Below are positions 1 through 51,515 of a stretch of 64,000 nucleotides of DNA, one piece after another. Both the position numbers and the translations under genes were made by a program. A model generated the notes under the pieces. The model did no database searches and had not been told where the DNA came from. It saw nothing but the letters and a program-made list of their open reading frames with translations. Within the stretch, counting starts at the first letter, position 1; the number at the start of each line of letters is the position of its first letter. The stretch is from Mobula hypostoma (Eukaryota). The stretch lies in NCBI RefSeq assembly GCF_963921235.1, contig NC_086104.1:64232001-64296000 (forward strand). Direction: 5' to 3'.

Positions 1-473
1 ATAAATAACTCTACAACGATCCATTTAGAACTGATCCCACTTGAGCTCTTCCTGCTGGGAACACCTCCTGTGCATAAGTGCATAGAAATCTCTCTGTTCT
101 CTCCACCAAGGCTTCTAGTGCAGCAAACAGCCCCTAAAGACTGCTGTGCTGGTCCATCACTCGTTTGCTGAGTCATCATCACCTCCACAATTACTTTCAC
201 CATTTCTTGCAACTGCAATGCATCTGCTCTTTTGCAGACAGGTTTTGAGCAATTCAGGCTAGCTTGAACTGATACTTGTCTTTCATATAATTGTGCCCCT
301 GCTGATGTGCTAAGGCAAGCAATAGTTAAGCTGTATGGTTGACGGAGTCATTAGAATGAAAAACAGTGATAGAGAAGCTTATCTTGCTCTGGTTTTCAGC
401 AGGGTTCCCAAATTGTGAGTCTACGTGTTAATGTGAAGGGGCAATGAAGGAAGAAATGGCACTTAAAGAGAAA

Positions 474-1928
474 AACACACATAAAGTACTGGAGGAGCTC
501 AGCAGGTCATGCAGTATCTATGGAAAGGATTAAAGAGTCGATGTTCCGGGCAGAGACCTTTCATCAGGAAGGAGGAAGGTGCCAGAATAAAAAGGTAGGG
601 GGTGGGGAGAGAGTCTAGCTGGAAGGCGTTAGATGAAGCCAGGTAGGGGGGAAAGGTCAAGGACTGGAGAAGAAGGAATCTGAGAAAAGAGGAGAGTGGC
701 CGATAGGAGAAAGGGAAGGAGGAGAGGACCCAAGGGTAAGTAATAGGCAGGTGAGAAGAGGTAAAAGGCCTGAGTGGGGAATAGAGGAGTGCAGGGAGGG
801 AGGTAAATTAGTTTACTGGAGGGGGGAGTAATAGGCAGGTGAGAAGAGGTAAGAGGTCAGAGTGGGGAATAGAGGAAGTGGGGTTTTTTTTACCAGAAGG
901 AGAAATCGATATTCATGCCATCAGGTTGGAGGCTACTCAGATGGATAGAAGGCATAGCACCTCCACCCTGAGGGAAGCCTAATTTTGGCACAAGAGGAGG
1001 CCATGGACCGACATGTCAGATTGGGAAATGGGAATCCGAATTAAAATGTTTGGCCACTGGGAAGTTCGGCTTTTGGCGGTTGGAGCCGAGGTGCTTGACA
1101 AAGCAGACCCCCAATTTATGATGGGCCTACCATATAGAGGAGATCACAACGGGAGCACTGGACACAATAGATGACCCAACAGATTCACAGGTGAAGTGTT
1201 GTCTCACCTGGAATGATGGGTTGGGGCCCTAAATGGAGGTAAGCGAGGAGGTGAGTAGGTGAATGGGCAGGTACAGCACTTAGGCCACTTGCAGGAATAG
1301 GTGCCAGGTGGGAGTTTAGTGGAGAGGGACGAATGGACAAGGGAATCATGGTGATCCTGTGAGGGGGGAGGGTAAAGATATGTTTGGTGGTAGGATCCCT
1401 TTGGAGATGGCACAGGTTGTGGAGAGTGATGTGTTGGATATGGAGGCTGATGGGGTGGTAGGTAAAGTCAAGAGGAACTCTATCACTGTTAAATTGGCAG
1501 GAAGAAAGAGTGAACGCAGATGTTCAAGAAATGGAGGAGATGTGGGCGAGGGAAACATCAATAGTGGAGGGAGGGAAACCATATTCTTTGAAGGAGGACA
1601 TCTCTGATGTCCTGGAACAGAAAGTTGTGTCTTGGCAACAGATGTGGCGGAGGCAAAGAAACTGAAAAAAAGGGAATAGCATTTTTACAGAAGATAGCGT
1701 GGGAAGAAATATAGTTGAGATAACCATGGGATTCAGTAGGTTTATAATAGATGTTGGTTGACAGTTTGTCTCCAGAGATGAAGACAGAAAGATCGAGAAA
1801 GGGAAGGAGGTATCCGAGATGGACTAAGTGAATTTAAGGGCAGGGTGGAAATTAGAGGCAAAGTTGAATCCTCCAGCATTTTATGTGTTGCTTTGGATTT
1901 TCAACATCTGCAGATTTCCTCATGTTTA
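474..1928 (-). mobile_element. Truncated Penelope-like retroelement: GIY-YIG region, pseudo-LTR with decayed hammerhead, inverted pseudo-LTR tail
   Basis: Minus-strand frameshifted peptides PGTYSCKWPKCCTCPFT and HFTCESV..VIYCVQCSRCDLLY; hammerhead-like CTGATGA..GGAACATCGACT at 535-569; inverted end at 1869-1927; possible TSD cacttaaagagaa (460-472) / catttaaagaaaa (1930-1942). Confidence 0.8.
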
Positions 1929-2159
1929 ACATTTAAAGAAAACCTGTAAGGACCAGGAAGGCCAGTTAACTTACATTGTCTGCACAGAATTACTGTCATC
2001 CAAGAACATCTGAAAATTCAAGAAAGTTGCAACAGCTACCACCCTCCACATAATCAATTTTAGAGTGAAATTCTATCCTGCTCAGCGTCTCCATAATGGA
2101 ATTATTCTGCTGCAGATTCTTTGTGATTCCTGTCTGTTTCTTGTATTTGCAGGTAACCT

Positions 2160-2300
2160 TTCTTTTTCTATCTTTCAGTTCAGATGAAAGATCTTGATGC
2201 CAAATGTTGACTTCCCTCCATAGATGCTGCCTGACGCTGAGTTCCTCCAGTGTATCTGGTGTTGTATCACATTCTAGCATCTGCTCTGTTTTAATTCTCC
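2160..2300 (+). mobile_element. Decayed Penelope pseudo-LTR fragment
   Basis: cagttcagatgaaagatcttgatgccaaatgttgact...ccatagatgctgcctgac...tcctccag, similar to 19327-19465. Confidence 0.6.
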
Positions 2301-2487: not shown

Positions 2488-3095
2488 GCAGCACAGTCAT
2501 GTAGTGGCTGGTATAATGCTTTAAGGCGCCAGTGATTGGATTTCAATTCTGGTCACTGTCTTTAAGGAGTCTGTACATTCCCTCAAGACTCTATGGGTTT
2601 CCTCTGGGTGCTCCAGTTTCCTCCCATATTCCAGAGACATACAGATTAGAATAGGTTATTTATTTACTTATATAGCGTGGATTAGGCCCTTCCATCCCTA
2701 CAAGCTGTGTTGCCCAGCAACCACCGACAACCCCGATATAATCCTAACCTAATCAAGTGACAATTTACAGTGACCAATTAACCCACTCAGTACAGCTTTG
2801 GACTGTGGGAAGAAACTGGAGCACCATCACAAAACCCACGCAGTCCATGGGGAGGATGTACAGAGGCCACTGGGATTGAACTCCACATTCCAACACCCTG
2901 AGTTGTAACAGCATCGTGCTACCCACCATGCAACCATGGATTTGTTAGTTGTGGAGCTGATACGTTGGTGCAGGAAACATGATGACACTTGAGGACAGCC
3001 CCCGGCACATCCTCAGACTGCACTAGTCGTTAACACACAATGACACATTTCACTGCATGTTTCCCAGCATCAATGACAAACAAAGATCATCTTTT
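2488..3095 (+). mobile_element. V-SINE (HE1-like) interrupted by a second V-SINE in the opposite orientation (about 2655-2940)
   Basis: V-domain gggtttcctctgggtgctccagtttcctccca on + and its reverse complement tgtgggaagaaactggagcacc at about 2804-2826. Confidence 0.7.
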
Positions 3096-5866: not shown

Positions 5867-8580
5867 GAATCAGAATCAGAATCAGATTTATTATCACCAG
5901 CATGTGACGTGAAATGTGTTAACTTAGCAGCAGCAGTTCAATGCAATACATAATATAGAAGAGAAAAAATAAATAAAATAAAAAATGATAATAATAAATA
6001 AGTAAATCAATTACAGTATACGTATATTGAATAGATTAAAAAACGTGTTAAAAAACAAAAATACTGCATATTAAAAAAAGTGACGTGGTGTCCAAGGGTT
6101 CAATGTCCATTTAGGAACCAGATGGCAGAGAGGAAGAAGCTGTTCCTGAATCACTGAGTGTGTCTCTTCAGGCTTCTGTACCTCCTTCCTGATGGTAACA
6201 GTGAGAAAAGGGCATGCCCTTGGTGCTGGAGGTCCTTAATAATGGACACTGCCTTTCTGAGACACCACTCCCTGAAGATGTCCTGGATACTTTGTAGGCT
6301 AGTACCCAAGATGGAGCTGACTAAATTTACAACCCTCTGCAGCTTCTTTTGGTCCTGTGCAGTAGCTCCCCTCATACCAGACAGTGATGCAGCCTGTCAG
6401 AATGCTCTCCACGGTACATCTATAGAAGTTTTTGAGTGTATTTGTTGACATGCCAAATCTTTTCAAACTCCTAATGAAGTATAGCCACGGTCTTGCCTTA
6501 TTTATAACTACATTGATATGTTGGGACCAGGTTAGATCCTCAGAGATCTTGACACCCAGGAACTTGAAACTGCTCACTCTCCACTTCTGATTCCTCTATG
6601 AGGATTGGTATGTGTTCCTTCGTCTTACCCTTCCTGAAGTCCACAATCAGCTCTTTTGTCTTACTGACGTTGAGTGCCAGGTTGTTGCTGTGGCACCACT
6701 CCACTAGTTGGTATATCTCACTCCTGTACGCCCTCTCGTCACCACCTGAGATTCTATCAATAATGGTTGTATCATCAGCAAATTTATCAATGGCATTTGA
6801 GTTATGCCAAGCCACCCAGTCATGTGTATACAGAGGGTAGAGCAGTGGGCTAAGCACACACCCCTGAGGTGCACCAGTGGTAATCGTCAATGAGGGGGAG
6901 CTGTTATCACCAGTCCGCACAGACTGTAGTCTTCTGGTTAGGAAATCGAGGATCCAATTGCGGAGGGAGGTAAAGAGGCCCAGGTTCTGCAACTTCTCAG
7001 TCAGGATTGTGGAAATGATGGTATTAAATGCTGAGCTGTATGTAGTCGATGAACAGCATCCTGACATGAGTTTTGTGTTGTCCAGGTGGTCCAAAGCCGT
7101 GTGGAGAGCCATTGAGATTGCATCTGCTGTTGACCTATTGTGGCGATGGGCAAATTGCAATGGGTCCAGGTCCTTGCTGAGGCAGGAGTTCAGATCAGTC
7201 ATGACCAACCTCTCAAAGCATTTCATCACTGTCGATGTGGGTGCTACCGGGCGATAGTCATTAAGGCAGCTCACATTATTCTTCTTAGGCACTGATATAA
7301 TTGTTGCTTTTTTGAAGCACATGGGTCTTCTGCCGTAGCAGTGAGAGATTGAAAATGTCCTTGAATATTCCCATTAGCTGGTTGGCACAGGTTTTCAGAG
7401 CCTTACCAAGTACTGCATCAGGACCTTCTCCCTTGTGAGGGTTCACTCTCTTTAAAGCCAGTCTAACATCAGCCTCTGAGACAGAGATCACAAGGTCATC
7501 AGGTGCAGTAGGGATCTTCACAGCTGTAGTTGTGTTCTCCCTTTCAAAGTGTGCATAGAATGCGTTAAGTTCATCTGGTAGTGTAGCATCACTGCCATTC
7601 ATGCTAATGGGTTTTGTTTTGTAGGAAGTAATGTCTTGTAAACCCTGCCAGAGTTGCCATGCATCCGATGTCGCCTCCAACCTCATTCGAAATTGTCTCT
7701 ATGCCCTTAAATTAGCCCTCCACAAATCATACCTGGTTTTCTGGTACAGGCCTGGGTCGCCAGACTTGAATGCCACAGATCTAGCCTTCAGCAGATGATA
7801 TACCTCCTAGTTCATCCACAGCTTTTGGTTTGGGAATGTACAGTAAATCTTTGTAGACCACACACTCATCCACACAGGTTTTAATGAAGTCGGTAACAAC
7901 TGCAGCATACTCATCCAGATTCGAAGATGAATCCCTGAATACAGTCCATTCCACCGATTCAAAGCAGTCCTGTAGGTGCTCCTGTGCTTCCCTTGTCCAT
8001 ACCTTCTTGGTCCTCACTGCTGGTGCTGCAGTCTTCAGTCTCTGCCTATACTCAGGGAGTAGAAGTACAGCCAGGTGATCAGACTTCCCGAAGTGAGGGC
8101 GTGGAATAGCATGGTAGGCATTCTTGATGGTGGTGTAGCAATGGTCCAGTGTGTTGTTTCCTCTGGTATTGTAAGTGATCTGTTGATGGTAATTGCTTAG
8201 TGATTTTTTCAGACTGGCCTGGTTAAAATCTCCCAAAATGATGGTGAAGGCGTTAGGGTGCGCTGTTTTGTGCATGTTGATCCCATTGCTCAGATCATCT
8301 AAAGCCTGATTGCCATTGGTCTGAGGTGGAATATTTACTGCTACCAAAGTGACCCTGGAGAACTCTCGTGGTAGCCGAAAAGGATGGAACTTAACTGCTA
8401 GATATTCCAGGTCTGGTGAGCAGAACTGGGACAGCACCGATATATTTGTGCACCAAAAAGAGTTGATCATGAGGCATATTCCCCCACCTCTGGTTTTGAG
8501 AGACTGTACAGATCTATCCTGACAGTGTATAGTAAATCCATCGATCTGAATTGCTGCATCTGGTACAGAAGGGGTTAGCT
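5867..8580 (-). mobile_element. Rex1/Babar-like LINE, endonuclease plus RT, frameshifted
   Basis: ORFs 7781..8470 (ILGDFNQA, TLDHCY, GKSDH), 6540..7322 ([28 protein letters not shown]); (ATTCTG)n tail at 5867-5888. Confidence 0.92.
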
Positions 8581-9305: not shown

Positions 9306-10182
9306 CTGTTGATAAATAATGTACTTTTGTCACTCAAGATTAAGTAAGATACATTTTCATTTCTGCTGTTCTTGAATACCATGGCTAATACCTTTTATTA
9401 AACTTCAGTTAGTGCATTTTCAGCAGAGTAATTGATCTCTAAAATACACATTCTTCAGCATGGTAGGACTTTGTATAGAGAAAATTTAAATTTATTTCAC
9501 AACAAATTCACTTTCACCCTTAATTGTATTCAATACTGTATCTGCTACAGAAAGGTGTTTGCTACTATATAACTACAAGGTTAAATACTGCCAAATCCAA
9601 CAAAACATTTTTTATTACTGCATTTATTTCCAAATGAGAAATAACATATGAAAGGGAGCCTTGTGTCAGAAAAATGGTAAACTACTAAGGTGATAATTGT
9701 AAACTAGTTAGGGAGTTTCTTAAACCTTTTTTTAACATTGCCTTTTTATTATTCCTATGCCAACCTCCAAATGTCCGTCTCTTTTCCTGCAATCAGGCAG
9801 TGGCTGAAATTAGTAATATAGGATTCCAGATGGCTCTTATGATTTAATTGGTATTTAATTAACTCTGGTATCTCAAGGGATACTTATGTTGCTAATCTAT
9901 TGCTAATAACCTGGCCATAACAACGCTCTTTTCCCAGAAGGTCAGCTGTGATTATGCACCTTCACTGTCAGCAATCCTGACGATGAAAGTATCGTCCTTT
10001 TTTATCATTTAATTTTGCCTCTAACAAGCACTTGGACATAATTGGAGAAAAACTGACAGCGCTGAGTTACAAGCTGGTCATGCTAATAGAAATCTATATT
10101 GACTATCCCTATGGGCTCTTTCCTTCCTACTTATCACTTAAATATTGCATGTTCCCTTTCTCTCACAGTTGAAACACATTTT

Positions 10183-11846
10183 CTCCCACATCATGAAGAC
10201 CCTGGAGAGACCTGTTCTGGAGCTGCTCCGGCCTATGGTCAAGCCACACTTAGATCCCCTCCAGTTCGCCTACCAGCCCCGACTAGGAGTTGAGGATGTC
10301 ATCGTCAACCTGCTGAACCATGTCTACGCCCACCTGGACAAGCCAGCGAGCACTGTAAGGGTCATGTTTTTTGACTTCTCCAGTGTGTTCAACACCATCC
10401 GCCCTGCTCTGCTGGGGGAGAAGCTGACAGCGATGCAGGTGGATGCTTCCCTGGTATCATGGATTCTTGATTACCTGACTGGCAGAACACAGTACGTGTG
10501 CTTGCAACACTGTGTGTCCGACAGAGTGATCAGCAGCACTGGGGCTCCACAGGGGACTGTCTTGTCTCCCTTTCTCTTCACCATTTACACCTCGGACTTC
10601 AACTACTGCACAGAGTCTTGTCATCTTCAGAAGTTTTCGGATGACTCTGCCATAGTTGGATGCATCAGCAAGGGAGATGATGTTGAGTACAGGGCTACGG
10701 TAGGAAACTTTGTCACATGGTGTGAGCAGAATTATCTGCAGCTTAATGTGAAAAAGACTAAGGAGCTGGTGGTAGACCTGTGGAGAGCTAAGGTACCAGT
10801 GACCCCTGTTTCCATCCAGGGGGTCAGTGTGGACATGGTGGAGGATTACAAATACCTGGGGATACGAATTGACAATAAACTGGACTGGTCTAAGAAATTG
10901 ATTTCTTTCAATTCCCAATAAAGGAACAAGCAGTTCAAAGTCAATGTGCATAAATCAATAGGCGCTGTCTTATTGGAGATACTACACAGCCATCACAAGA
11001 ACCAAAATTACTTTGTCCCATAGATTTGCATTGTAATACTTATACTAAATTATGAATTCACATGTTTACTATCACTATATTATTTAGCTCTTGCAGATTA
11101 GTACTGCAGGCAGTTGGAATTAGGTGTTCAATACACAAAAAAAGGACAATAAACTGGACTGGTCAAAGAATACTGAGGCTGTCTACAAGAAGGGTCAGAG
11201 CCGTCTCTATTTCCTGAGGAGACTGAGGTCCTTTAACATCTGTCAGACGATGCTGAGGATGTTCTACGAGTCTGTGGTGGCCAGTGCTATCATGTTTGCT
11301 GTTGTGTGCTGAGGCATCAGGCTGAGGGTAGCAGACACCAACAGAATCAACAAACTCATTCATAAGGCCAGTGATGTTGTGGGGATGGAACTGGACTCTC
11401 TGACGGTGGTGTCTGAAAAGAGGATGCTGTCCAAGTTGCATGCCATCTTGGTCAATGTCTCCCATCCACTACATAATGTACTGGGTGGGCACAGGAGTAC
11501 ATTCAGCCAGAGACTCATTCCACCGAGATGCAGCACAGAGCGTCATAGGAAGTCATTCCTGCCTGTGGCCATCAAACTTTACAACTCCTCCCTCGCAGGG
11601 TCAGACACCCTGAACCGATAGACTGGTCCTGGACTTATTTCATAATTTACTGACATAATTTACATATTACTATGTAACTATTTATTACTATTTTCTATTA
11701 CTATTTATTATTTCTATGACTATTACTATTTACTAATAGTAACATTACTGTTACTATTTCTATTACTACTTATTATTTATGGTGCAACTGTAATGAAAAC
11801 CAATTTCCCCCGGGATCAATAAAGTATGGCTACTACTACTACTACT
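10183..11846 (+). mobile_element. 5'-truncated Rex1-like LINE, interrupted at 10897-11144
   Basis: ORF 10145..10921 (LDPLQFAY, FFDFSS, GAPQGTVLSP, KFSDD) resumes in 11124..11621; AATAAA and (TAC)n tail. Confidence 0.9.
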
Positions 11847-18025: not shown

Positions 18026-19225
18026 CTAGAAAACAAACATGACAAATATCTCTCAGTCATTAAAGCAAACAGAATTATTTTAAAACAGTTTGGGGAAATG
18101 TATTTCCTTTCTCCTCTGACTTCCCTCTTATTCCTTATCTTTCAATTCCTCTCCTGATAACAATCTTGCCCAAAGGATGGACCCCGGTGATACTTTGGTT
18201 AAACAATCATTTGGGAACTGAGGACCAAGAGAGATAATGACAGGAACCTGATGAGTCACAGTTGTCAATCCAACTGATAATATCCTCTGCATACTTGCGT
18301 AAGCACTCTCCAGGAGACGTTACAAGTTGGCAGTTAGGAACAAGTATTCTGACCGACTCTCTTCTTAGGCCGAGAACATTAAATGGAATTGTTATATCTA
18401 TACCCAGGCCAAAGTCAGCTGTCTGAATTTAGGTCACAGTTTAAATTTGGAACATCCCAGGTTTATGCTGCTTTATAATTTTTTGCCTATCCAACCAAAG
18501 TCATACAGAATTTTACTAACTGTCATTCACTTTGTACCTCATAATGCAGCATGCTTTATTTGCCTTAGAAGCAATCTTAGATTATACTTTTATGTAATAA
18601 ATAATGTCTGAGAACCTTTGGAATAAACAATAAGATATATGAAAAATTCTAAACAGATTCTAGAGAAGGAAGTAAACTGATCAGTTACAGTGTTTATTAA
18701 TAGAGCCTGATTTTTTTACCTTTGTATGGCATAAATACAGAAATGGGAGCTCTTTAAATCGTTTTTATTATACTGCCACATTTAAGTGAACAAGCCCTTG
18801 TTTGATCATGGAAGTGCCCAATCTTCACTTAATATTTCTTTTCAAAATAGATCTGAGGACAGAATTTGCTTTTTCAGATATTTGGGGAACTCTTTCACGA
18901 CCTTGAAAACTGGCTGCTCGCTCCTCTGCCATGCTGTCTGGTCCAGTGTGGTTCTGACACAGTATTTTACTGGGAGCCCATTCCCAGCACATCGGTGTGG
19001 CACGGTTCGCTCAGCACAAACAGGCTGCTGCAATCATATAATAGCTTTGACAGTTAGTAGTGCTCTGTAGTAGGTGACCTAACCTTGTAAGCTGGGAAGC
19101 ATGTGAAAGTCTGCAGCTACTTTAGACCAACTCCAGAGTGGGAAAATAAGAGCTTTTGTGAGGAATACCAGGCAAGACAAGATGGAATTGATGATATCAG
19201 AGCAAAAGATCTAATAATGCAGTGA

Positions 19226-19465
19226 CACACATCAAAGTTGCTGGTGAACGCAGCAGGCCAGGCAGCATCTCTAGGAAGAGGTACAGTCGATGGTTCAGGC
19301 CAAGACCCTTCGTCAGGACTGTTAGGACAGTCCTGACGAAGGGTCTCGGCCTGAAACGTCGACTGTACCTCTTCCTAGAGATGCTGCCTGGCCTGCTGCA
19401 TTCACCAGCAACTTTGATATGTGTTGCTTGAATTTCCAGCATCTGCAGAATTCCTGTTGTTTTCG
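19226..19465. mobile_element. Miniature fold-back Penelope-derived element (two inverted pseudo-LTR/hammerhead arms)
   Basis: 97-nt arms 19226-19322 and 19327-19423 with 5 mismatches and a 4-nt loop; perfect 15-bp TSD ctaataatgcagtga at 19211-19225 and 19466-19480. Confidence 0.88.
19327..19366 (+). ncRNA. Minimal type I hammerhead ribozyme motif
   Basis: ACAGTC-CTGACGA-agggtctcggcct-GAAACGTC-GACTGT: helix I ACAGTC/GACTGT, both core boxes present, palindromic ACGT in place of helix III. Confidence 0.8.
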
Positions 19466-19847
19466 CTAATAATGCAGTGAGTTGCTTTGGTACGAAGAGT
19501 AATGGAGCAAAAGTGCCCGACAGATATCCCTACTACTATATCCTAGACTGAGAATGGCTTTGAGTAGTAGGGCAAATAGAAAAGTGTGTTTCAGTACATA
19601 CATTTAGACATGCAGAGACATGGGGAAGTAAGCCACATGATCCAACCCCATTAAGCACTTAGGTTACTGCAATTGTACGGTATAACTCAGTTAAAAGCAG
19701 CAGCTTCTCATTATACATGAAAAATAGGATATTGGTTCAGATATAATCGCTTGTGCTTTTCCTTTCTTCCAAAGCATCAGGAGTTATTCTTCATCGTGCA
19801 CGGAGGCTAACCAGACAAAGCAGTGATGATTCTCACACAAAACTTAC

Positions 19848-19918
19848 TTGAGGATAAGTGCCATGGTTTCCTTTCTGTCCTTTCCTTGAAAAGGCAATGA
19901 CCCCGTCAACATTTCAAA
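19848..19918 (-). CDS. rps6ka2: RSK3 exon (71 nt): FEMLTGSLPFQGKDRKETMALIL(K)
   Basis: TAG/GTAAGT boundaries. Confidence 0.96.
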
Positions 19919-20099
19919 CTAGGCAATAAGGTTAAAACAGGTACGTTAGAGACATCACCAATGTTCAAATAGCTCTGCCAACATGATCTGCATGCTTCAT
20001 TTGGCTGTTCAAATCAGTCACCCAATCAGTAACAAAGTGAAGATATTTACCAAACAAATAACCTGTTGGACTTTCATAAATATGGTTTGTACGTGAAAA

Positions 20100-28473: not shown

Positions 28474-28608
28474 ATCTGATGACGGGTCTTGGCCTGAAAC
28501 ATTGACTGTTCATTTCCCTCCATAGATGCTGCCTGACCCGCTGAGCTTCTCCAGTAAATTTTTGTCCATTTATCCAGATTTCCAGCATATGCAGTTCTCC
28601 TGTGTTTC
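28474..28608 (+). mobile_element. Penelope pseudo-LTR fragment starting at the hammerhead core
   Basis: CTGATGAcgggtcttggcctGAAACattgactgt followed by ccatagatgctgcctgacc and the atttccagcat tail. Confidence 0.75.
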
Positions 28609-29794
28609 ATAATAAAGCACAGGATCTAATTTTCCAATTAATGTTTTCAATAAAGAGAGATTATATTGGGCTGAATGGACAATAGGCAACACATAGAAAT
28701 ACACTCACATTGTACTACAGTATTCCTATCCTAACAAGATGGTAATTAATAGTCTTCAGTCAGCTCAGTGATTCCAAATCTGCAGCTATAGCCATGTTGC
28801 TAAGCAGAGATAATGTTTTGTTGTTAATAAGTAGATTTTGGATCCTATACCAGGACTGTGACTAAAGGTTAACCAGCATATAGACATCAGATTCCCATAA
28901 ACTCATTCAATGTGTAAAATGTCTGTTGAGTTTATTTCCATTCATTCACAAATGAGTATGAAGTTTATTGAGAAAGTTAATCTTTATTGCCCATCCAGTA
29001 AGCTCCAGCAGGAAGTCTGAGCCAGCTTCTTGAAACACTGCAATCTGCATATTGAAGATATTTCCCTTTTAGTGTTGGGTAGGGATTGCAAGTATTTTGG
29101 CCTAATGAAGTTAAAGGAACATTACCGTATTTCAAGGACAAGATGACATTTGGCGTAGGTCGTTATTGGAGATGTCCAATGATTGGGACTCTGTGGTATG
29201 AATGTTTCATGTTACCGAGCAGCCTAACTTTCATATTGTCCAGATCTTACCATGAGCAGGAATGGAGTGCTTCACCATTTAACTTGTGAGTAAGATTACA
29301 TTGAATAATCATCAATAAATATCTCTGCTTCTCATATGAAATACTAAGTCTTTGATGAGGCAACTGAAACTGCCCTTAGAAACTTCAGAAATACACCCAG
29401 GGGCAGAGCTGATTGGCCTTCAATAATTACAATTACTTCCTTTTTCCTAATTGTGATTCACTCCAGCCGATATTCACATTCAAATAAATGAAATAAAACA
29501 TTGCACAAATAATTTACTTTCAAACTACTGCCAAGACTTAAATATGACAGTAAGAAGTGAAAATATGGCAAGTCTGTCAACATCTGAGCAGTAACAGACT
29601 TCAGATCTAACTGAGGATCTGCACATGAAGCACTTACTTGGCTGTTTTTGTGTCCAACATCTAAAATATTACAGCAGTGACAAAGCTTCAATACTTCAAT
29701 GGTCTTAGCAATGTTTGATGTTATAGCTCTTCATACATAAGTTTCACTCTGAGTTCACTTATTGAACTGCTGACTGCCTCTACTTCTTGAGTAA

Positions 29795-39146: not shown

Positions 39147-39600
39147 ATAACATGCAAAATGATGAAGAAATTTAGTGGGTCAGGCAGCATCCGTGGAGGG
39201 AAATGGACAGTTGATATTTTCAGGTTGGGACCCTTCATCTGGACTGAAAGATAGAGATGAGACAGTCAGTATAAAGAGGTGAAGGTAGGGGTAGAGCAAG
39301 AATTGGCAATAATAAGTGGACCCAGGTGATAGGTGGGGTTGATAAGCAGACAAGGGAGGGGAGATAGGGAATTTTGCTAGGGAGTGATATGTGGAAGTGA
39401 CAAAGGACTGAAGATAATGGAATCTGATGGGAGAGGAATCCTACCAACTCTTGCCTTCCCTTCACCTTTTCATTCTAGCTATTTCCTCTCTACATTTTAG
39501 TTTAGATGAGGCATTTTGACTCAAAATGTTGACTGTCAATTTCCTTCCAATAAATGCTGTACAGTCCACTGAGCTCCACCAGTAATTGTTGCATCAGGTC
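39147..39600. mobile_element. Decayed Penelope-derived fold-back element
   Basis: Left arm gtcaggcagcatccgtggagggaaatggacagttga..cccttcatctggactg inverted to right arm tagatgagg..aaatgttgactgtcaatttccttcca..tgctg. Confidence 0.7.
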
Positions 39601-45569: not shown

Positions 45570-48500
45570 AAGTCACAATACAAACCACAGGACACAGTCC
45601 AAAAGAAGAAAAAAAGGGATGGGGGGAAAATGTAAATAGTCTTTTGGATGAGACATTGTCAATTCTGGGCTATGGAAGAAACCACAGGACCTTGTGGATT
45701 TGTATAAAACAGTGGTTGAGTCATAGTCAGATGTTGTGTCCATTTCTGGATACAGCTTAAAATGGAAGGATGGGTAAGGCTTACTAAAATGCTTCCATGG
45801 ATGAGAGACTTTGGTACTTAGGATACACTGGAGAAGATGAAGTTGTTCTTCTTGGAAGAGAAGAGAATAAAGATTATTGGCAAAAGAACCAAGAGTCACC
45901 AGCTTGTGCTGGAAAACACAGAACACTGGATGAGTCTTTATTGATAGTGGTAGGCACAATCTATATGAGACGTTTTTGATAGCTTTCTCCACTATGAATA
46001 GTCCCACATAGTGTGGTGCCAACTTGTGACTCTCAGCTTTTAAAGGAGGATCTTTAGACACCAGCCAGACTTTCTCCCCTGGCCTAAGAGACCTCACCTA
46101 TCAGTGGAGCTGATCAGCCTGCCGGGCATATTGTTTCTGAGTGCACAGCAGAGACGCCCTGGCTCATCTCCACGTGCACTTGTAGCATTGGACCAACTGT
46201 TCAGCAGCAGGAATCCCAAAGTCAACCTCTTGGTCAGGGAAATGCAGTGGCTGGAATCCCTTCTGGCATTCAAAGGAGGAGAATGAGTGGAGATTGTTGT
46301 GGGAAATCTCTGCCCAAACCATTTGGGAGCTCCAGGTCATGGGGTTGGAAGAGACAAGGCAGCAGAGGGTTGTCTCCATCTCCTGATTCACACTCAGTCC
46401 TCAGTCTGGCTGCTAGATTTGGGGTGAAACCAGATGACAGACTGGCTGTGGCTTGAAAAATAAAGCAGAAAGCACTCCAAAAATATGACATGAACTGTGC
46501 TCCTCAATCAGACACTAGATATCGAGGGAAGTCGTGCAGCCTGAGCACATGCTGAACCATGAGGGTGGCAGTCTCATGAGCCAATGGGAGCTGTGGAGAG
46601 CAATGAAGTGGCAGCCTGGAGAAATGGTCAACAACCACCGGAATGGTAATGTTTCCATCAGGCAGGGGCCAGCCAGTGATGAAATCACTAAGAAGTTAGA
46701 CCAGGGATGGTGAAGCACAGGCAGTGGGTAGAGCGGGTCCACAAGCCACTGATGTATTATCTTGTTCTAGGCACAAGTACGATGAGCTGAGATGAAGTTG
46801 TGGACATCCTGGGACATAGTCGCTCACCAAAATCATCTCTTTATAAATTCCACGGTCCATTGAATTCCCAGATGACCAACTAGATGGGAAGAATGACCCC
46901 ACTCCAACACTCTGGGGTGCACAATGGCAGGGAAAAACAGCTGGTTGGGAGAGCCCCCCCCCCCCCGCCCCACTTGCACCTGGTTCCGACAGTTGAATAG
47001 CCCTCACCTCTGCCTCTATTCCTCAAATCACTGGAGCAGCAATGCAAGAGCAAGGAAGGATGGGATCTAGACTGGCATTGTCCTCAAAGATGCCAAACTG
47101 GTGGGAGAGAGCATCGGCTTTGGTACTCTTGCTGCAAGAATGCTGAATGGTAGGTGAGGGTGAAACTAAACTGAGTGAAGAAGAGGGCTCAGTGGGCTTG
47201 GTGGGATTTGAGACTCCCAAATGTAGGAGAGGTTTTTGTGATCTGTCCATACCAGAAAGGGATGCTCTGCCCTCTCCAGCCAGTGTCACCACGCTTCCAG
47301 GGCCTCCATGACAGCCAGAAGTTCTCAGTTCCTGACATCATAGTTCCACTCGGCTAGAGTCAAGTGATGGGAAGGAGAAGAACAGGGGTGCAGCTGATTA
47401 TGCACAGAAGAGCACTGGGCAAGTACAGCTGCAATGTCGATGCCTGACAATGACAATGGCAAACCTTGACAATGAGTGACGTGATGGGTTTGAACGTTGC
47501 AGCACTGGGTAAATGGTGAAGTGTCACTTTAATTCTGAGAATGTTTGGTCTGCTTCATTTGCCCACAGGAATTCTGCAGGGGTCTTCTTAGTGAGTGCTT
47601 TTATTGGGGCCACGATGGAACTGAAGTTTCCGAAGAAGCGGCGATAAATGTTTGCAAATCCCATGAAACACTTCACAAGTTTGATTGTAGATGGTTTGGG
47701 CCACTTTGTGACTACCTGAAGTTGACATGGGTCCATCTGAACACTGGAAGGGGTGAGAATATAGCCTAATAACGTCATCTGCTCTTCGTGAAATGCATAC
47801 TTCTCTGGCTTGGCATAGAGGTTGTTCTCGAGGAGCCAACTGAGAACCCTCGAGACAGGCTGGACGTGTTCTTCGCAAAAGCAGGAATAAATAAGAATGT
47901 CGTCCAAATACACAAAAACAAACTGATTCAACATGTCCTGGAGCACATCATTTACCAGGGCCTGAAAAATAGGCAGGGCGTTGGCCAGACCAAATGGTAA
48001 TCATAGTTGCCAGTGGAGGTATTGAATATTAGTTTTCCCTTCTCAGATACAAACTGTGCAGATCTATCTTGGAGAATATGGTTGCTCCTTGGAGATGCTG
48101 AAACACAGAGGCAAGCAGGGGAAGAGGGTGGTTGGCCTCTTCACTATGATATTGTTGAGGGGCCGATAATTAATGCAGGGATGGAGCTTGCTGTTCTTCT
48201 TGCTCACAAAAAAGAAGCCTGCTCCTGCCGGTGATAAATTCTAAATCCGATGCCTCCTTGATGTACTCTTCAATGGCCATCGTTTCTGGATGAGAGAACG
48301 AAAAGAGCCGGCCCCCGGGAGAACCAGTACTGAGTAAGAGGTGACTGTCATAATTGTATGGCTGGTGTGAAGGCAGGGAGGTACCTTCTACGCACTGAAG
48401 ACCTCAAGAAGGTCATGATATTTAGCCAGAATGCCAGGTCCACAGTAGCGGTTCACACCAAAGTGGATATGCTGACAATGGTTTGAGCTGGTCTCAGACA

Positions 48501-49628
48501 GGTAGAAGACATGCCAGCCCCCACTCTTGGAGTGCCTTTAGGGACCAATCCATCCACTGGTTATGTCGAGATAGCCAGGGAGGGCTAAGCACCAGTGACA
48601 GCTCAGGTGAATCCACAAGATGGAAGGAAAGCTGTTCCCTATGGTTGTCTTCTAGCTCAAGTGGAGGGGTTCTCTTGAAAGCTGGATCTTGCCAGTGCCC
48701 AGGGGCCAACCACCCAGTGCCTTGGTGTTGATATTCTGTCTCAGTTGCTGAGTTGGAACTCTCCACCTTCCCAAGAGTCAGTAAATGCCTGAAGCCCATG
48801 GGTCAGAGACCCCACGACAAGGAAGCTGGGAGCATTGCATGATTAGGGGACGCTGCTTGCGGGAAGAATTGACCCATTAGAATTCCCCACTTGCTGAAAG
48901 GGTACTTGGGACATGCTGCCCAGAAGTGTCCTTGGGTTGTCACAGAGGAGACAGGAACCTGTTCTCCTGCACTGATTTCAGTCCTCCTGAAATAAGTGCA
49001 TCATCATTGAACTGTCCTGGCTGGGCTTGGAAAGTTAGCTCACATTGTGTAATAAAATTCCTGCAGCCCTCAGGGTCACCAGGGTATCTGCCTGGTGGAG
49101 GAATACTCAGTTTTGGTCTGGATGCTGTCAATGGAGTCAAGGTATTAGATCCCGAGGCTGGTGAGGCCGTTAAAGAGGAGGATGTGTGAAATGCTGGAAG
49201 TGGGACTGAACTGGAGGAATTCTGCTGAACTGCGGCAGCGAGAGTGCTAATGGCTGCGACCTGAATCTGACTGTTGGTAGTTAGCTGCTGAACGACAGCC
49301 TTGAGAGCAGTAATTGCTGCCACCTGTCTGTGGTGAGCTGCTGAACTCTCACTGCGAGGGCTGATACCTGTTCTTCCTGCTTACACTGGGCATGCCGCTC
49401 TGAAAATAGCCGTCACACTGCATGAGTCACTTCTGCAAATGTAACCTCCACTGACTGTAACTTCTCCCATCTCTGACCAACCAACATCAGGGCCATGGTC
49501 AGCTGTTCTCTCTCTGCTGGGTCCATCTTCTTTGCTGCCGAGTTATGCTTACAAGGTGCAGTTAAGACGCAAGTGCAGAGAGATAGACACCGAAGCAGAT
49601 GAACAGTTCACTGACTTTTAATCAAAAC
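45570..49628 (-). mobile_element. Ty3/gypsy LTR retrotransposon (sushi-like), internally deleted and degenerate
   Basis: gag start MDPAEREQL near 49526; PPGRYPGDPEGCRNFITQCELTF; RT FVFVYLDDILIYS; integrase NQEMETTL..WAEISHN and KLAPHYVGLF; 5' LTR end with ATTAAA at about 49548-49628. Confidence 0.9.
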
Positions 49629-49639
49629 TGCCTTTTTGA

Positions 49640-51515
49640 AGGAGGTTCTGCAACAATTATACCAGTGCCTAAGAAGAATAATGTGAGCTGCCTTCAGGAC
49701 TATCGCCTGGTAGCACTCACATCGACAGTGATGAAATGCTTTGAGAGGTTGATCATGACTAGACTGAACTCCTGCCTCAGCAAGGACCTGAACCTATTGC
49801 AATTTGCTTACTGCCACAATAGGTCAACAGCAGACGCAATATCAATGACTCTTCACATTGCCTTAGACCACCTGGACAATACAAACACCTATGTCAGGAT
49901 GCTGTTCATCGACTATAGCTCAGCATTTAACACCATCACTCCCACAATCCTGATTGAGAAGTTACAGAATCTGGGCCTCTGTACCTACCTCTGCAATTGG
50001 ATCCTCGACTTCCTAACCGGAAGACCACCATCTGTGCAGATTGGCGATAATATCTCCTCCACACTGACAATCAACACTGGTGCACCTCAGGGGTGTGTGC
50101 TTAGCCCACAGCTCTACTGTCAAAATACACATGACTGTGTAGCTAGGCATAGTTCAAGTACCATCCATAAAGTTGCTGATGATACAATCATTGTTGGTAG
50201 AATCTCAGATGGTGATGAGAGGGCGTACTGGAGCAAGATATGCCAACTAGTGGAGTAGTGCCGCAGCAACAACCTGGCACTCAACATCAATAAGAAGAAA
50301 GAGGTGACTGTGAACTTCAGGAAGTGTAAGACGAAGGAACACATACTAATCCTCATAGGGGGATCGGAAGTGGAGAGTGAGCAGTTTTAAGTTCCTGGGT
50401 GTCAAGACCTCTGAGGATCTACCCTGGTCCCAACATATCGATACAGCTATAAAGGAGGCAATACAGTGATTATACTTCATTAGGAGTTTGAAGAGATTTG
50501 GTATCAGTACTTCCAGTTGAACTGTCTTTTTGTGTGTTTCCCCCTAGTCGTCAGTCTGTGGTTTTGTATTGCCATGTGCTCCTGTCCCCACTCCTGCTCT
50601 ACTCCGGCCCCTGTATTACTGTGTACTCCGTCTCTCATCTGTTTCTCATTATTACCTGTTTTGCTGCCACCTGTGTCTCATTGTGCTCCACCTATCATCT
50701 GCCTCTCTGTTTATTGCTCAGTGTATTTCAGTCCTGTGTTTTCACCTGTTTGTTGTCAGGTTGTCGCAGTGAATTTGCTGAGCCTTTCTAGCATTGTATC
50801 TGTACTCTGTCCATCTGAATATTGACTGTGTGTTTTCTGATTCTGGTTTTTGGATTTTGCTGGATGTTTTGATCTCTCCCTGAACTTTGACACTGACTTT
50901 GTTTGCACGTTGGGATTTGTTACTCAATTAATATCGCTGTGTGCACAGTACTGGGTCTGTGATTGGATCCCTGCCCCAGCGGCCTGACAATTTGGTATGC
51001 CAACAAAATCTTCTATAGATGAACCGTGGAGAGCACTCTGACAGGCTGCATCACTGTCTGGCATGGGGGGTGGGCTACTGCACAGGACCAAAAGAAGCTG
51101 CAGAGGGTTGTAAATTTAGTCAGCTCTATCTTGGGTACTAGCCTACAAAGTATCCAGGACAGCTTCGAGGAATGGTGTCTCAGAAAGGCAGTGTCCATTA
51201 TTAAGGACGCCCAGCACTCAGGGCATGCTTTTCTCACTGTTACCATCAGGTAGGAGGTACAGAAGCCTGAAGGCACACACTCAGTTATACAGGAATAGCT
51301 TCTTCCCCTCTGCCATCTGATTCCTAAATGTTCATTGAAGCCATCAACACTACCTCACTTTTTAAACATTTATTTCTCTTGCACAATTTTTTAATCTATT
51401 CAAAATACATAGTGTAATTGATTCATTGTTTTCTTCTATATCATGTATTGCATTGAACTGCTGCTGCTAAGTTAAAAAATTTGGCACATGCTGGTGATAA
51501 TAAATCTGATTCTGA
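49640..51515 (+). mobile_element. 5'-truncated Rex1/Babar-like LINE, same family as 5867-8580, interrupted by a solo LTR
   Basis: ORF 49599..50258 is near-identical to ORF 6540..7322; ORF 51026..51253; taataaatctgattctga tail. Confidence 0.92.
50502..50989 (+). mobile_element. Solo LTR (488 bp)
   Basis: Termini tatcag...ctgaca (TGTCAG inverted repeat, one mismatch); ATTTGG direct repeat at 50496-50501 and 50990-50995; the LINE is continuous once it is removed. Confidence 0.85.

What the first reader, a model, noticed from the sequence alone, without database searches (positions are those of the whole stretch)
19327..19366. Intact minimal hammerhead ribozyme inside an RSK3 intron
Seen: ACAGTC CTGACGA agggtctcggcct GAAAC GTC GACTGT, with a perfect 6-bp helix I, both conserved core boxes, a short helix II and only the palindrome ACGT where helix III should be. 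Known: Penelope-like elements carry minimal type I hammerheads in their pseudo-LTRs, and these are thought to cleave as dimers by pairing the palindromic helix III. Inference: the + strand RNA (antisense to the host gene) could self-cleave after C19360 when paired with a second copy.
Basis: partly seen in the sequence, partly recalled or inferred. Interest (0 to 1): 0.8.

Follow-up and report, generated by a model that had tools for sequence, protein, structure and literature searches.

The report
Penelope retroelement scrap carrying a hammerhead motif
The 40-base hammerhead ribozyme motif is real, but it is one copy among tens of thousands carried by a truncated, hairpin-shaped Penelope-like retrotransposon insertion in an RSK kinase intron, and nothing suggests it cuts RNA at this site.

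Summary
At 19327-19366 (+) there is a complete minimal type I hammerhead: a 6-bp helix I, both core boxes, helix II, an ACGU palindrome in place of helix III, and a GUC cleavage site after C19360. It is the only intact one in the 64 kb window. Shuffled sequence gives 0.035 per window.

It is not a free-standing element. It lies inside a 240-bp insertion (19226-19465) flanked by a perfect 15-bp target-site duplication. The insertion consists of two inverted 98-nt arms (95% complementary, 4-nt loop) and a 41-nt tail at one end only. This is the published signature of a 5'-truncated Penelope-like element (PLE) insertion, and PLEs are known to carry this minimal hammerhead.

The family is hugely repeated in this genome. 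The same insertion is present at the same site in a related species. The second arm carries a decayed copy of the motif.

Several things argue against activity at this locus:
- Any transcript spanning both arms folds into a hairpin of about -200 kcal/mol that buries the ribozyme.
- No tandem partner is present.
- The conserved G10.1-C11.1 pair is G·U.
- The intact copy is antisense to the host gene.
- Two probable RNA runs cover only the repeat, not its flanks.

Verdict: a known kind, of low interest. This scan has already noted the same family many times elsewhere in this genome.

The parts
19211..19225 (.). Left copy of the 15-bp target-site duplication (CTAATAATGCAGTGA)
   Evidence: Perfect 15/15 direct repeat that exactly brackets the insertion (family D2).
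19226..19322 (-). Inverted (minus-strand) 5'-truncated PLE copy without the tail. It carries a decayed hammerhead at 19283-19322 (-): loop CpG changed to TpG, A15.1 to C, G16.2 to A.
   Evidence: Inverted repeat I1, 98 nt, 95% complementary. The five arm differences are listed. Other family copies continue past 19225 into the tail sequence (loose-end consensus ending in TTCAAGCA).
19323..19326 (.). 4-nt junction (TAGG) between the two head-to-head copies
19327..19366 (+). Intact minimal type I hammerhead motif, with predicted cleavage between C19360 and G19361
   Evidence: No Rfam hammerhead model matches it at E up to 10.
19327..19424 (+). Direct (plus-strand) 5'-truncated PLE copy, forming the right arm of the fold-back
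   Evidence: Family homology begins at about 19328-19329 (loose ends).
19425..19465 (+). Tail of 37-41 nt present at this end only. Family copies typically end at 19462-19464.
   Evidence: [quoted passage not shown]
19466..19480 (.). Right copy of the 15-bp target-site duplication
18026..19847 (-). Host intron of an RSK (p90 ribosomal S6 kinase alpha) gene. Donor GT is at 19847-19846 and acceptor AG at 18027-18026.
28476..28607 (+). Older family copy that starts exactly at CTGATGA, so it lacks the helix I 5' strand. G16.2 is changed to A and C17 to T.
468..582 (-). Older family copy that extends upstream. A13 is changed to G, G16.2 to A, and helix I is broken.
39165..39262 (-). Older family copy that extends upstream. 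The core reads CAGATGA (U4 changed to A), and helix III and the cleavage site have decayed.
2168..2300 (+). Old, heavily decayed family copy with a pyrimidine tract and CAG just 5' of helix I

Best explanation
The motif is the minimal hammerhead of a Penelope-like retrotransposon (PLE) family that is extremely abundant in this cartilaginous-fish genome.

A PLE reverse transcriptase/GIY-YIG endonuclease cut an A/T-rich intronic site with a 15-bp stagger. It then copied only the last ~140 nt of its RNA: the hammerhead, the start of the element's 3' region, and the tail. The insertion was completed as a head-to-head fold-back, either by self-priming or template switching, or by priming from both nicked strands. 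One end has the tail and the other lacks it.

The result is a 240-bp insertion that was dead on arrival. The hammerhead on the + arm is intact only because its three CpGs and core have not yet mutated. The twin on the - arm has already lost its core.

At this locus the motif most likely does nothing. In any transcript covering both arms it is buried in a 98-bp hairpin, and it has no partner for the dimeric helix III.

What is shown: the motif, the TSD, the fold-back with its tail, the repeat abundance, presence of the insertion in a sister species, and the arm divergence.

What is inferred: the enzyme responsible and the order of the integration steps.
For: - Motif and statistics.
- Perfect 15-bp TSD, 98-nt inverted arms and a 41-nt one-sided tail.
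- Published PLE hallmarks. High 5'-truncation, an adjacent inverted 5'-truncated copy, and a 30-40 bp tail often at one end only (PMC8557442). Inverted pLTR, 31-bp tail, TSD and palindromes at the inverted junction, read as self-priming (PMC3846280). A PLE protein that cleaves and extends both strands at A/T-rich sites, with two internal RT start sites that define the tail about 85-130 nt downstream of the hammerhead (PMC11167929). Here the two ends lie 64 and about 102-105 nt past the cleavage site.
- Repeat family. 73,077 and 46,389 contigs from two DNA runs pile onto 19225-19465, while the flanks sit at 16x and 7x. Five further diverged copies lie in the window.
- Age and neutrality. In a species whose flanks differ by about 1.5%, contigs cross both junctions. 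The arms differ at 5 of 98 positions, 3 of them CpG transitions, and these destroy the minus-arm ribozyme.
- Sequestration. The + transcript folds at -203 kcal/mol, z = -23. The active dimer is disfavoured energetically.
- No flank coverage in two probable RNA runs.
Against: - No PLE reverse transcriptase or GIY-YIG ORF lies in this window, so the family cannot be tied to an autonomous PLE here. The RVT_1 ORFs found look LINE-like. The PLE assignment therefore rests on architecture and on the ribozyme type.
- The exact symmetry of the two arms, both truncated at the same base just 5' of helix I, is not predicted by two independent priming events. It needs self-priming or a template with a defined 5' end.
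- Only assembled contigs were available, not raw reads. RNA ends at 19360/19361 could not be examined, and the 'RNA' label of those runs is a guess.
- Thermodynamic folding ignores tertiary contacts and protein assistance. The Anolis PLE hammerhead cleaves only with its protein present.
Confidence: 0.85

Rival explanations
1. The 240-bp fold-back is itself a propagating non-autonomous unit. A short RNA of about 100-140 nt with a defined 5' end at helix I, or the hairpin as a whole, would be repeatedly copied by PLE machinery. The symmetric truncation would then be a family property rather than a one-off accident.
For: - Both arms stop at the same base.
- Another in-window copy starts within 6 nt of the same point (28476).
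- Many contig joints land at 19328-19333.
- Unchecked scan notes describe similar 124-242-bp units elsewhere in this genome.
Against: - Many family copies continue upstream of 19329 with shared sequence (loose-end consensus; copies at 468-582, 39165-39262 and 2168-2300).
- The joints have short sides (20-27 nt) and are biased by the palindromic reference.
- No second fold-back exists in this window.
- Self-priming explains the symmetry without requiring a special template (PMC3846280).
Confidence: 0.08
2. The intact + strand hammerhead is a working ribozyme at this locus. It would cleave an antisense transcript of the RSK gene, with helix III supplied in trans by a transcript of another family copy.
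For: - The core, helices I and II, and the GUC site are intact.
- Family sequences appear in contigs of probable RNA runs.
- PLE hammerheads can cleave when dimeric or with protein help.
Against: - The motif is sequestered in a hairpin of -203 kcal/mol.
- The active dimer (-18.1 kcal/mol) loses to -28.6 and -36.9 for the alternatives.
- The 10.1-11.1 pair is G.U.
- The monomer MFE pairs core bases GACG with CGUC.
- There is no transcript signal on the flanks.
- The twin arm decayed neutrally.
- Published min-HHRs show no activity as monomers and only low activity as dimers.
- No cleavage-site read ends were seen even for an active Anolis PLE.
Confidence: 0.03
3. The relevant feature is the hairpin, not the ribozyme. 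The host pre-mRNA (minus strand) contains a 98-bp near-perfect double-stranded RNA 382 nt into the intron. This could be processed into small RNAs against the PLE family, or edited by ADAR.
For: - The minus-strand hairpin folds at -198 kcal/mol.
- Rfam microRNA-precursor models align to it purely by its hairpin shape.
- It lies in the sense transcript of an expressed-type gene.
Against: - All Rfam microRNA scores are far below their gathering cut-offs (46 against 100, and 38 against 60).
- The arms have drifted apart at 5 positions with no compensation.
- No small-RNA or intron coverage data were available.
- Such hairpins are an expected by-product of PLE integration.
Confidence: 0.06
4. It is a non-LTR retrozyme, meaning a circular-RNA-forming tandem repeat with hammerheads.
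For: - It has a type I hammerhead.
- It is small and non-coding.
- Retrozymes are derived from PLE pLTRs (bioRxiv 10.64898/2026.07.22.740005).
Against: - Retrozymes are head-to-tail tandem repeats of 150-450 bp with canonical hammerheads in every unit (PMC7229834).
- Here there is one direct and one inverted copy, no tandem unit, and only one cleavage site per strand, so no monomer could be excised.
Confidence: 0.02

Closest known systems
Minimal hammerheads (min-HHR) of metazoan Penelope-like elements (Cervera & de la Pena 2014, PMC4209133)
   Same: Both are type I with the CUGANGA and GAAA cores and no helix III stem-loop. [quoted passage not shown] Both occur massively as single motifs in truncated copies, sometimes as close pairs on opposite strands. 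For both, a dimeric mode of action is proposed and activity is weak.
   Different: The 10.1-11.1 pair here is G.U, not the highly conserved G-C, and apparently so in this whole subfamily. Helix II is 4 bp with two wobbles, against 6-8 bp in the Schistosoma and Drosophila examples. No cleavage assay exists for this sequence.
PLE insertion architecture: pLTR, inverted 5'-truncated copy and one-sided 30-40 bp tail (Arkhipova 2013 PMC3846280; Craig 2021 PMC8557442; Frangieh 2024 PMC11167929)
   Same: It has a TSD-flanked, head-to-head inverted copy with the tail at one end only. The target is A/T-containing. The hammerhead lies about 100 nt from the 3' end.
   Different: This is an extreme miniature. 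It has no ORF and no full pLTR, only about 98 nt per arm. The TSD is 15 bp, against 8-10 bp in the rotifer examples. The arms are exactly symmetric.
Non-LTR retrozymes and newt satellite 2 hammerheads
   Same: Both have a type I hammerhead with an unstable helix III that works as a dimer, and both have a PLE-related origin.
   Different: [quoted passage not shown] This is a single inverted pair with no tandem neighbour.
Conserved intronic hammerheads of amniotes (Rfam HH9 and HH10 type)
   Same: A hammerhead motif located in a vertebrate intron.
   Different: Those are single-copy, lie on the sense strand of the host gene, have a stable helix III and are conserved across orders. This one is antisense, belongs to a repeat family and is decaying. 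No Rfam hammerhead model matches it.

Membership tests
PLE minimal hammerhead (min-HHR) | Catalytic boxes C3-U4-G5-A6-N7-G8-A9 and G12-A13-A14, with a cleavage triplet ending in U-H | tested here: met
   CTGACGA, GAAA and GTC are present.
PLE minimal hammerhead (min-HHR) | Helix I of about 4-6 bp that is open-ended (type I topology) | tested here: met
   ACAGTC pairs with GACTGT over 6 bp. The outermost pair uses A19327, which appears to be a junction base rather than a family base.
PLE minimal hammerhead (min-HHR) | Unpaired nucleotide between A9 and position 10.1 | tested here: met
   A19340 is unpaired in the MFE fold, and helix II is GGGU/GCCU. The copy at 28476 has C at this position, which excludes the alternative A-U register.
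PLE minimal hammerhead (min-HHR) | Highly conserved G10.1-C11.1 pair | tested here: not met
   G19341 pairs with T19352 as G.U. Four of the six in-window copies have T here. No variant reaching 10% appears at 19352 among family contigs.
PLE minimal hammerhead (min-HHR) | No helix III stem-loop, and a palindromic 15.2-16.2 that allows a dimeric helix III | tested here: met
   ACGT at 19356-19359. A pseudoknot-free domain-swapped dimer can be drawn, at -18.1 kcal/mol.
PLE minimal hammerhead (min-HHR) | Resides in a PLE pseudo-LTR or in a truncated PLE copy | tested here: inconclusive
   The architecture (TSD, inverted copy, one-sided tail) matches the published PLE hallmarks. No RT or GIY-YIG ORF of a PLE was found in the window to link to it.
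PLE minimal hammerhead (min-HHR) | Family-wide covariation in helices I and II | tested here: inconclusive
   Six in-window copies are 77% paired, with one double change, no better than shuffles. This is too few copies, and they are mostly dead. Genomic copies outside the window could not be fetched.
PLE minimal hammerhead (min-HHR) | Self-cleavage at the predicted site, as a dimer or with protein | not testable with these tools
   Only assembled contigs were available, and these cannot show RNA ends (table 6 empty).
Rfam hammerhead families (Hammerhead_1, Hammerhead_3, Hammerhead_II, HH9, HH10) | Covariance-model score at or above the gathering cut-off | tested here: not met
   No hammerhead hit at the gathering threshold, nor at E up to 10 on 451 nt, nor on 51 nt. 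This is expected, because those models require a helix III hairpin.
Non-LTR retrozyme | Head-to-tail tandem repeats with a hammerhead in each unit | tested here: not met
   There is one direct and one inverted copy and no tandem unit. The nearest same-strand copy is 9 kb away and broken.
microRNA or hairpin-RNA precursor | Match to a curated precursor family, or evidence of small RNAs | tested here: not met
   The mir-789, mir-2766 and similar hits are shape-only and lie far below their gathering scores. Small-RNA data were not available.

The most novel reading that the evidence does not exclude
The fold-back is not a one-off integration accident. Instead it is a member of a self-perpetuating class of miniature PLE parasites: short RNAs that begin at hammerhead helix I and end at the PLE reverse-transcription start sites. 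These would be inserted as 'tail-out' palindromes carrying hammerheads of both polarities. Intronic copies like this one would feed double-stranded RNA from host pre-mRNAs into silencing of the family.
Probability: 0.08. Interest if true: 0.45.

Novelty: new member of a known kind. Interest (0 to 1): 0.15.

Why it matters
It matters little on its own. Minimal hammerheads in Penelope-like elements, and their dispersal as thousands of single motifs in truncated copies, have been described since 2014.

The copy is useful as a clean, datable miniature of the PLE integration signature: a 15-bp TSD, a head-to-head fold-back, and a tail at one end. That signature fits the recent in vitro finding that a PLE protein nicks and extends both strands and starts reverse transcription at two internal sites.

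It also adds a small point to an open question about what PLE hammerheads are for. An extremely successful subfamily appears to carry G.U at the otherwise conserved 10.1-11.1 pair. This is in line with reports that hammerhead catalysis is dispensable for insertion.

Tried and rejected
- **Rfam.** I ran a gathering scan of the whole window and permissive scans of 451 nt and 51 nt. There was no hammerhead hit. The only hits were sub-threshold microRNA models that respond to the long hairpin.
- **RNA ends at 19360/19361.** Both run searches returned only assembled contigs, so starts, ends and strand cannot be read. The single read-laying run showed zero coverage of the unique flanks in two probable RNA runs. 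The repeat itself drew heavy pile-up from other family copies that cannot be assigned to this locus.
- **Covariation.** The six in-window copies gave nothing beyond shuffles.
- **Link to an autonomous PLE.** ORFs of 110 aa or more gave LINE-like RVT_1 and endonuclease hits and a Tf2-type SH3, but no GIY-YIG. A BLAST of the sequence upstream of the longer copies against each other found no shared long body.
- **Spliced template.** I considered that the truncation at helix I reflects a spliced template, because the family has a pyrimidine tract plus CAG there. I rejected this for this copy because it retains the CAG.
- **Retrozyme reading.** Rejected on architecture.
- **Scan look-ups.** Look-ups by sequence and for a full-length PLE note were blank.
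- **Start codon.** An ATG 21 nt past the cleavage site stays open to the end of the tail in the 28476 copy. It hits a stop in this copy. Two copies are too few to call it the PLE start codon.

Full report
**Observation**

The stretch at 19327-19366 (+) reads ACAGTC, CTGACGA, A, GGGT-CTCG-GCCT, GAAA, CG, TC, GACTGT. In hammerhead numbering this gives:
- a 6-bp helix I;
- the C3-A9 box, with N7 = C;
- an unpaired A;
- a 4-bp helix II (G.U, G-C, G-C, U.G) closed by CUCG;
- G12-A14;
- A15.1-C15.2-G16.2-U16.1 with no loop, which is the ACGU palindrome;
- C17 at 19360.

The core pattern is unique in the window, with 0 expected by chance. A min-HHR descriptor that I ran on both strands returns only this site. 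The mean in 200 dinucleotide shuffles was 0.035. The motif is therefore real and not a chance match.

No Rfam hammerhead model recognises it, even at E up to 10 on a 51-nt query. This is expected for a motif with no helix III hairpin.

The motif is the first 40 nt of the right arm of a 98-nt inverted repeat. The arms are at 19225-19322 and 19327-19424, are 95% complementary, and are separated by a 4-nt spacer. Beyond the right arm lies a 41-nt extension. The whole 240-bp block (19226-19465) is bracketed by a perfect 15-bp direct repeat, CTAATAATGCAGTGA. This is an insertion with a target-site duplication.

The left arm is the same sequence on the minus strand. Its hammerhead has lost A15.1 (now C) and G16.2 (now A), plus a loop CpG. 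The arms differ at 5 of 98 positions, and three of those are CpG transitions.

**The family**

Five further, older copies lie in the window, at 28476-28607 (+), 468-582 (-), 39165-39262 (-), 2168-2300 (+), and a tail fragment at 1865-1927. None has an intact ribozyme.

I laid contigs of public runs on 18700-20000. The flanks sit at single-copy depth (16x and 7x). In contrast, 73,077 and 46,389 contigs pile onto 19225-19465 in the two DNA runs. Other copies typically end at 19462-19464 and are followed by dissimilar, A/T-rich flanks. Many continue upstream of 19329 with shared sequence, so this copy is 5'-truncated.

In a second organism whose flanks differ by about 1.5% (17 differences over about 1,115 nt), contigs cross both insertion junctions. 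The insertion therefore predates that species split. This agrees with the 5% divergence between the arms.

**What it is**

The published hallmarks of Penelope-like element insertions are:
- strong 5'-truncation;
- an adjacent inverted 5'-truncated copy;
- a 30-40-bp 'tail' at one end only;
- short TSDs;
- palindromes at the inverted junction, attributed to self-priming;
- a hammerhead near the 3' end of the pseudo-LTR.

These are described in PMC8557442 and PMC3846280. Frangieh et al. (PMC11167929) showed that a lizard PLE protein cleaves and extends both strands at A/T-rich sites. It starts reverse transcription at two internal sites downstream of the hammerhead, and the interval between those sites is the tail.

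In this insertion the tail-less end lies 64 nt past the cleavage site and the tailed end about 102-105 nt past it, a gap of about 37-41 nt.

The ribozyme type also matches the metazoan PLE min-HHR of Cervera & de la Pena (PMC4209133). It has no helix III, a palindromic 15.2-16.2 and an extra nucleotide before 10.1. That paper also notes mostly single motifs in truncated copies, and pairs 100-700 bp apart on opposite strands. One listed hallmark is not met: the 10.1-11.1 pair is G.U, not G-C. Four of the six in-window copies share the U, and no variant reaching 10% is seen at that position among family contigs.

I could not link the family to a PLE coding region in this window. The reverse-transcriptase ORFs present look LINE-like, and one fragment is Ty3/Tf2-like.

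**Does it work here?**

Four lines of evidence bear on this.

1. Folding.
   - The isolated 40-mer prefers a fold in which core bases GACG pair with CGUC at the cleavage site (-14.3 kcal/mol). The hammerhead-competent fold scores -10.3.
   - The domain-swapped double hammerhead scores -18.1 kcal/mol. Two monomers score -28.6, and the best dimer scores -36.9.
   - Any + strand transcript that spans both arms folds into a hairpin of -203 kcal/mol, z = -23. The minus strand, which is the host pre-mRNA, does the same at -198.
2. Partner. There is no intact same-strand copy anywhere in the 64 kb.
3. Orientation. The host gene is an RSK-family kinase on the minus strand, with exons found and best solved-structure matches to RPS6KA3, RPS6KA1 and RPS6KA6. 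The intron runs from 19847 to 18026. The intact motif is therefore antisense to the host, and the sense-strand copy is the broken one.
4. Expression. Two probable RNA runs of this species and its relative cover only the repeat, and coverage of the flanks is zero. These are contigs, so RNA ends cannot be read.

Published work also tempers expectations:
- Min-HHRs show no activity as monomers and low activity as dimers.
- The Anolis PLE hammerhead needs its protein, is dispensable for insertion in vitro, and leaves no detectable read ends at its cleavage site.
- PLE clades without hammerheads proliferate well.

**Mechanism proposed (inferred)**

The steps would be as follows:
1. Staggered cleavage of the intronic target, 15 bp apart.
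2. Target-primed reverse transcription from the tail-proximal start site on one strand.
3. Truncation just 5' of helix I.
4. Formation of the inverted arm. This could occur by self-priming or template switching onto the nascent cDNA. Alternatively it could occur by priming from the second nick at the tail-less start site on a template ending at the same base.

The exact symmetry of the arms favours self-priming or a template with a defined 5' end. I could not distinguish between these.

**Rivals**

- A re-copied fold-back unit or defined short template (about 8%).
- Processing of the intronic hairpin into small RNAs, or editing of it (about 6%).
- A ribozyme acting in trans at this locus (about 3%).
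- A retrozyme (about 2%), which is contradicted by the lack of tandem units.

**Earlier notes of this scan**

A search of the scan's notes for 'hammerhead' and 'Penelope' found 406 notes. They describe the same family many times in this genome, which one note calls a devil ray. One follow-up on another 242-bp fold-back reached the same conclusion as mine. I treated these notes as leads only. The architecture they describe (tail-out palindromes, 14-15-bp TSDs) is what I verified independently for this copy.

**Verdict**

The inference that the ribozyme functions at this locus is not supported. This is a new member of a known kind and of low interest.

Noticed in passing
window 2140-2180 (+) and 39246-39262 (-): In longer family copies, a pyrimidine tract ending in CAG sits immediately 5' of hammerhead helix I, and it looks like a 3' splice site. 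Cervera & de la Pena report that the Drosophila virilis Penelope intron ends exactly at the 5' end of helix I. The same arrangement may be conserved in this vertebrate family.
   Followed up: partly
window 28526-28609 (+) and 19381-19431 (+): An ATG lies 21 nt downstream of the hammerhead cleavage site. In the 28476 copy it opens a frame that runs to the end of the tail (28 codons). In the 19327 copy it hits a stop after 16 codons. It could be the start of the PLE ORF, which in other PLEs begins inside the pLTR.
   Followed up: partly
window 19225-19424, minus strand: The host pre-mRNA would contain a 98-bp near-perfect double-stranded RNA hairpin (-198 kcal/mol), 382 nt downstream of the 5' splice site. 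This is a potential ADAR or Dicer substrate. No RNA data were available to check it.
   Followed up: no
window 19352 and the family as a whole: The subfamily appears to carry U at 11.1, giving G.U in place of the conserved G10.1-C11.1 pair. The ancestral C11.1-G12 is a CpG. One older copy, at 543-567 (-), still has the C.
   Followed up: partly
window 6540-8470 (-): LINE remnant. ORFs match RVT_1 (E = 6e-23) and weakly match an AP-type endonuclease-reverse transcriptase family. It lies in another intron of the RSK gene.
   Followed up: no
window 10145-10921 (+) and 49599-50258 (+): Two further reverse-transcriptase ORF fragments (RVT_1, E = 5e-21 and 5e-24). The element type was not determined.
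   Followed up: no
window 45573-46097 (-): ORF with a Tf2-1-like SH3 domain (E = 1e-11), which is a fragment of a Ty3/gypsy-type LTR retrotransposon integrase region.
   Followed up: no
window 734-876: A tandem duplication of 88 nt (two 55-nt cores, 91% identical) in G-rich sequence, lying just upstream in element orientation of the old family copy at 468-582 (-).
   Followed up: no
window 2587-2845: Inverted repeat of 59 nt (73% complementary) whose arms look like two oppositely oriented copies of a SINE-like repeat.
   Followed up: no
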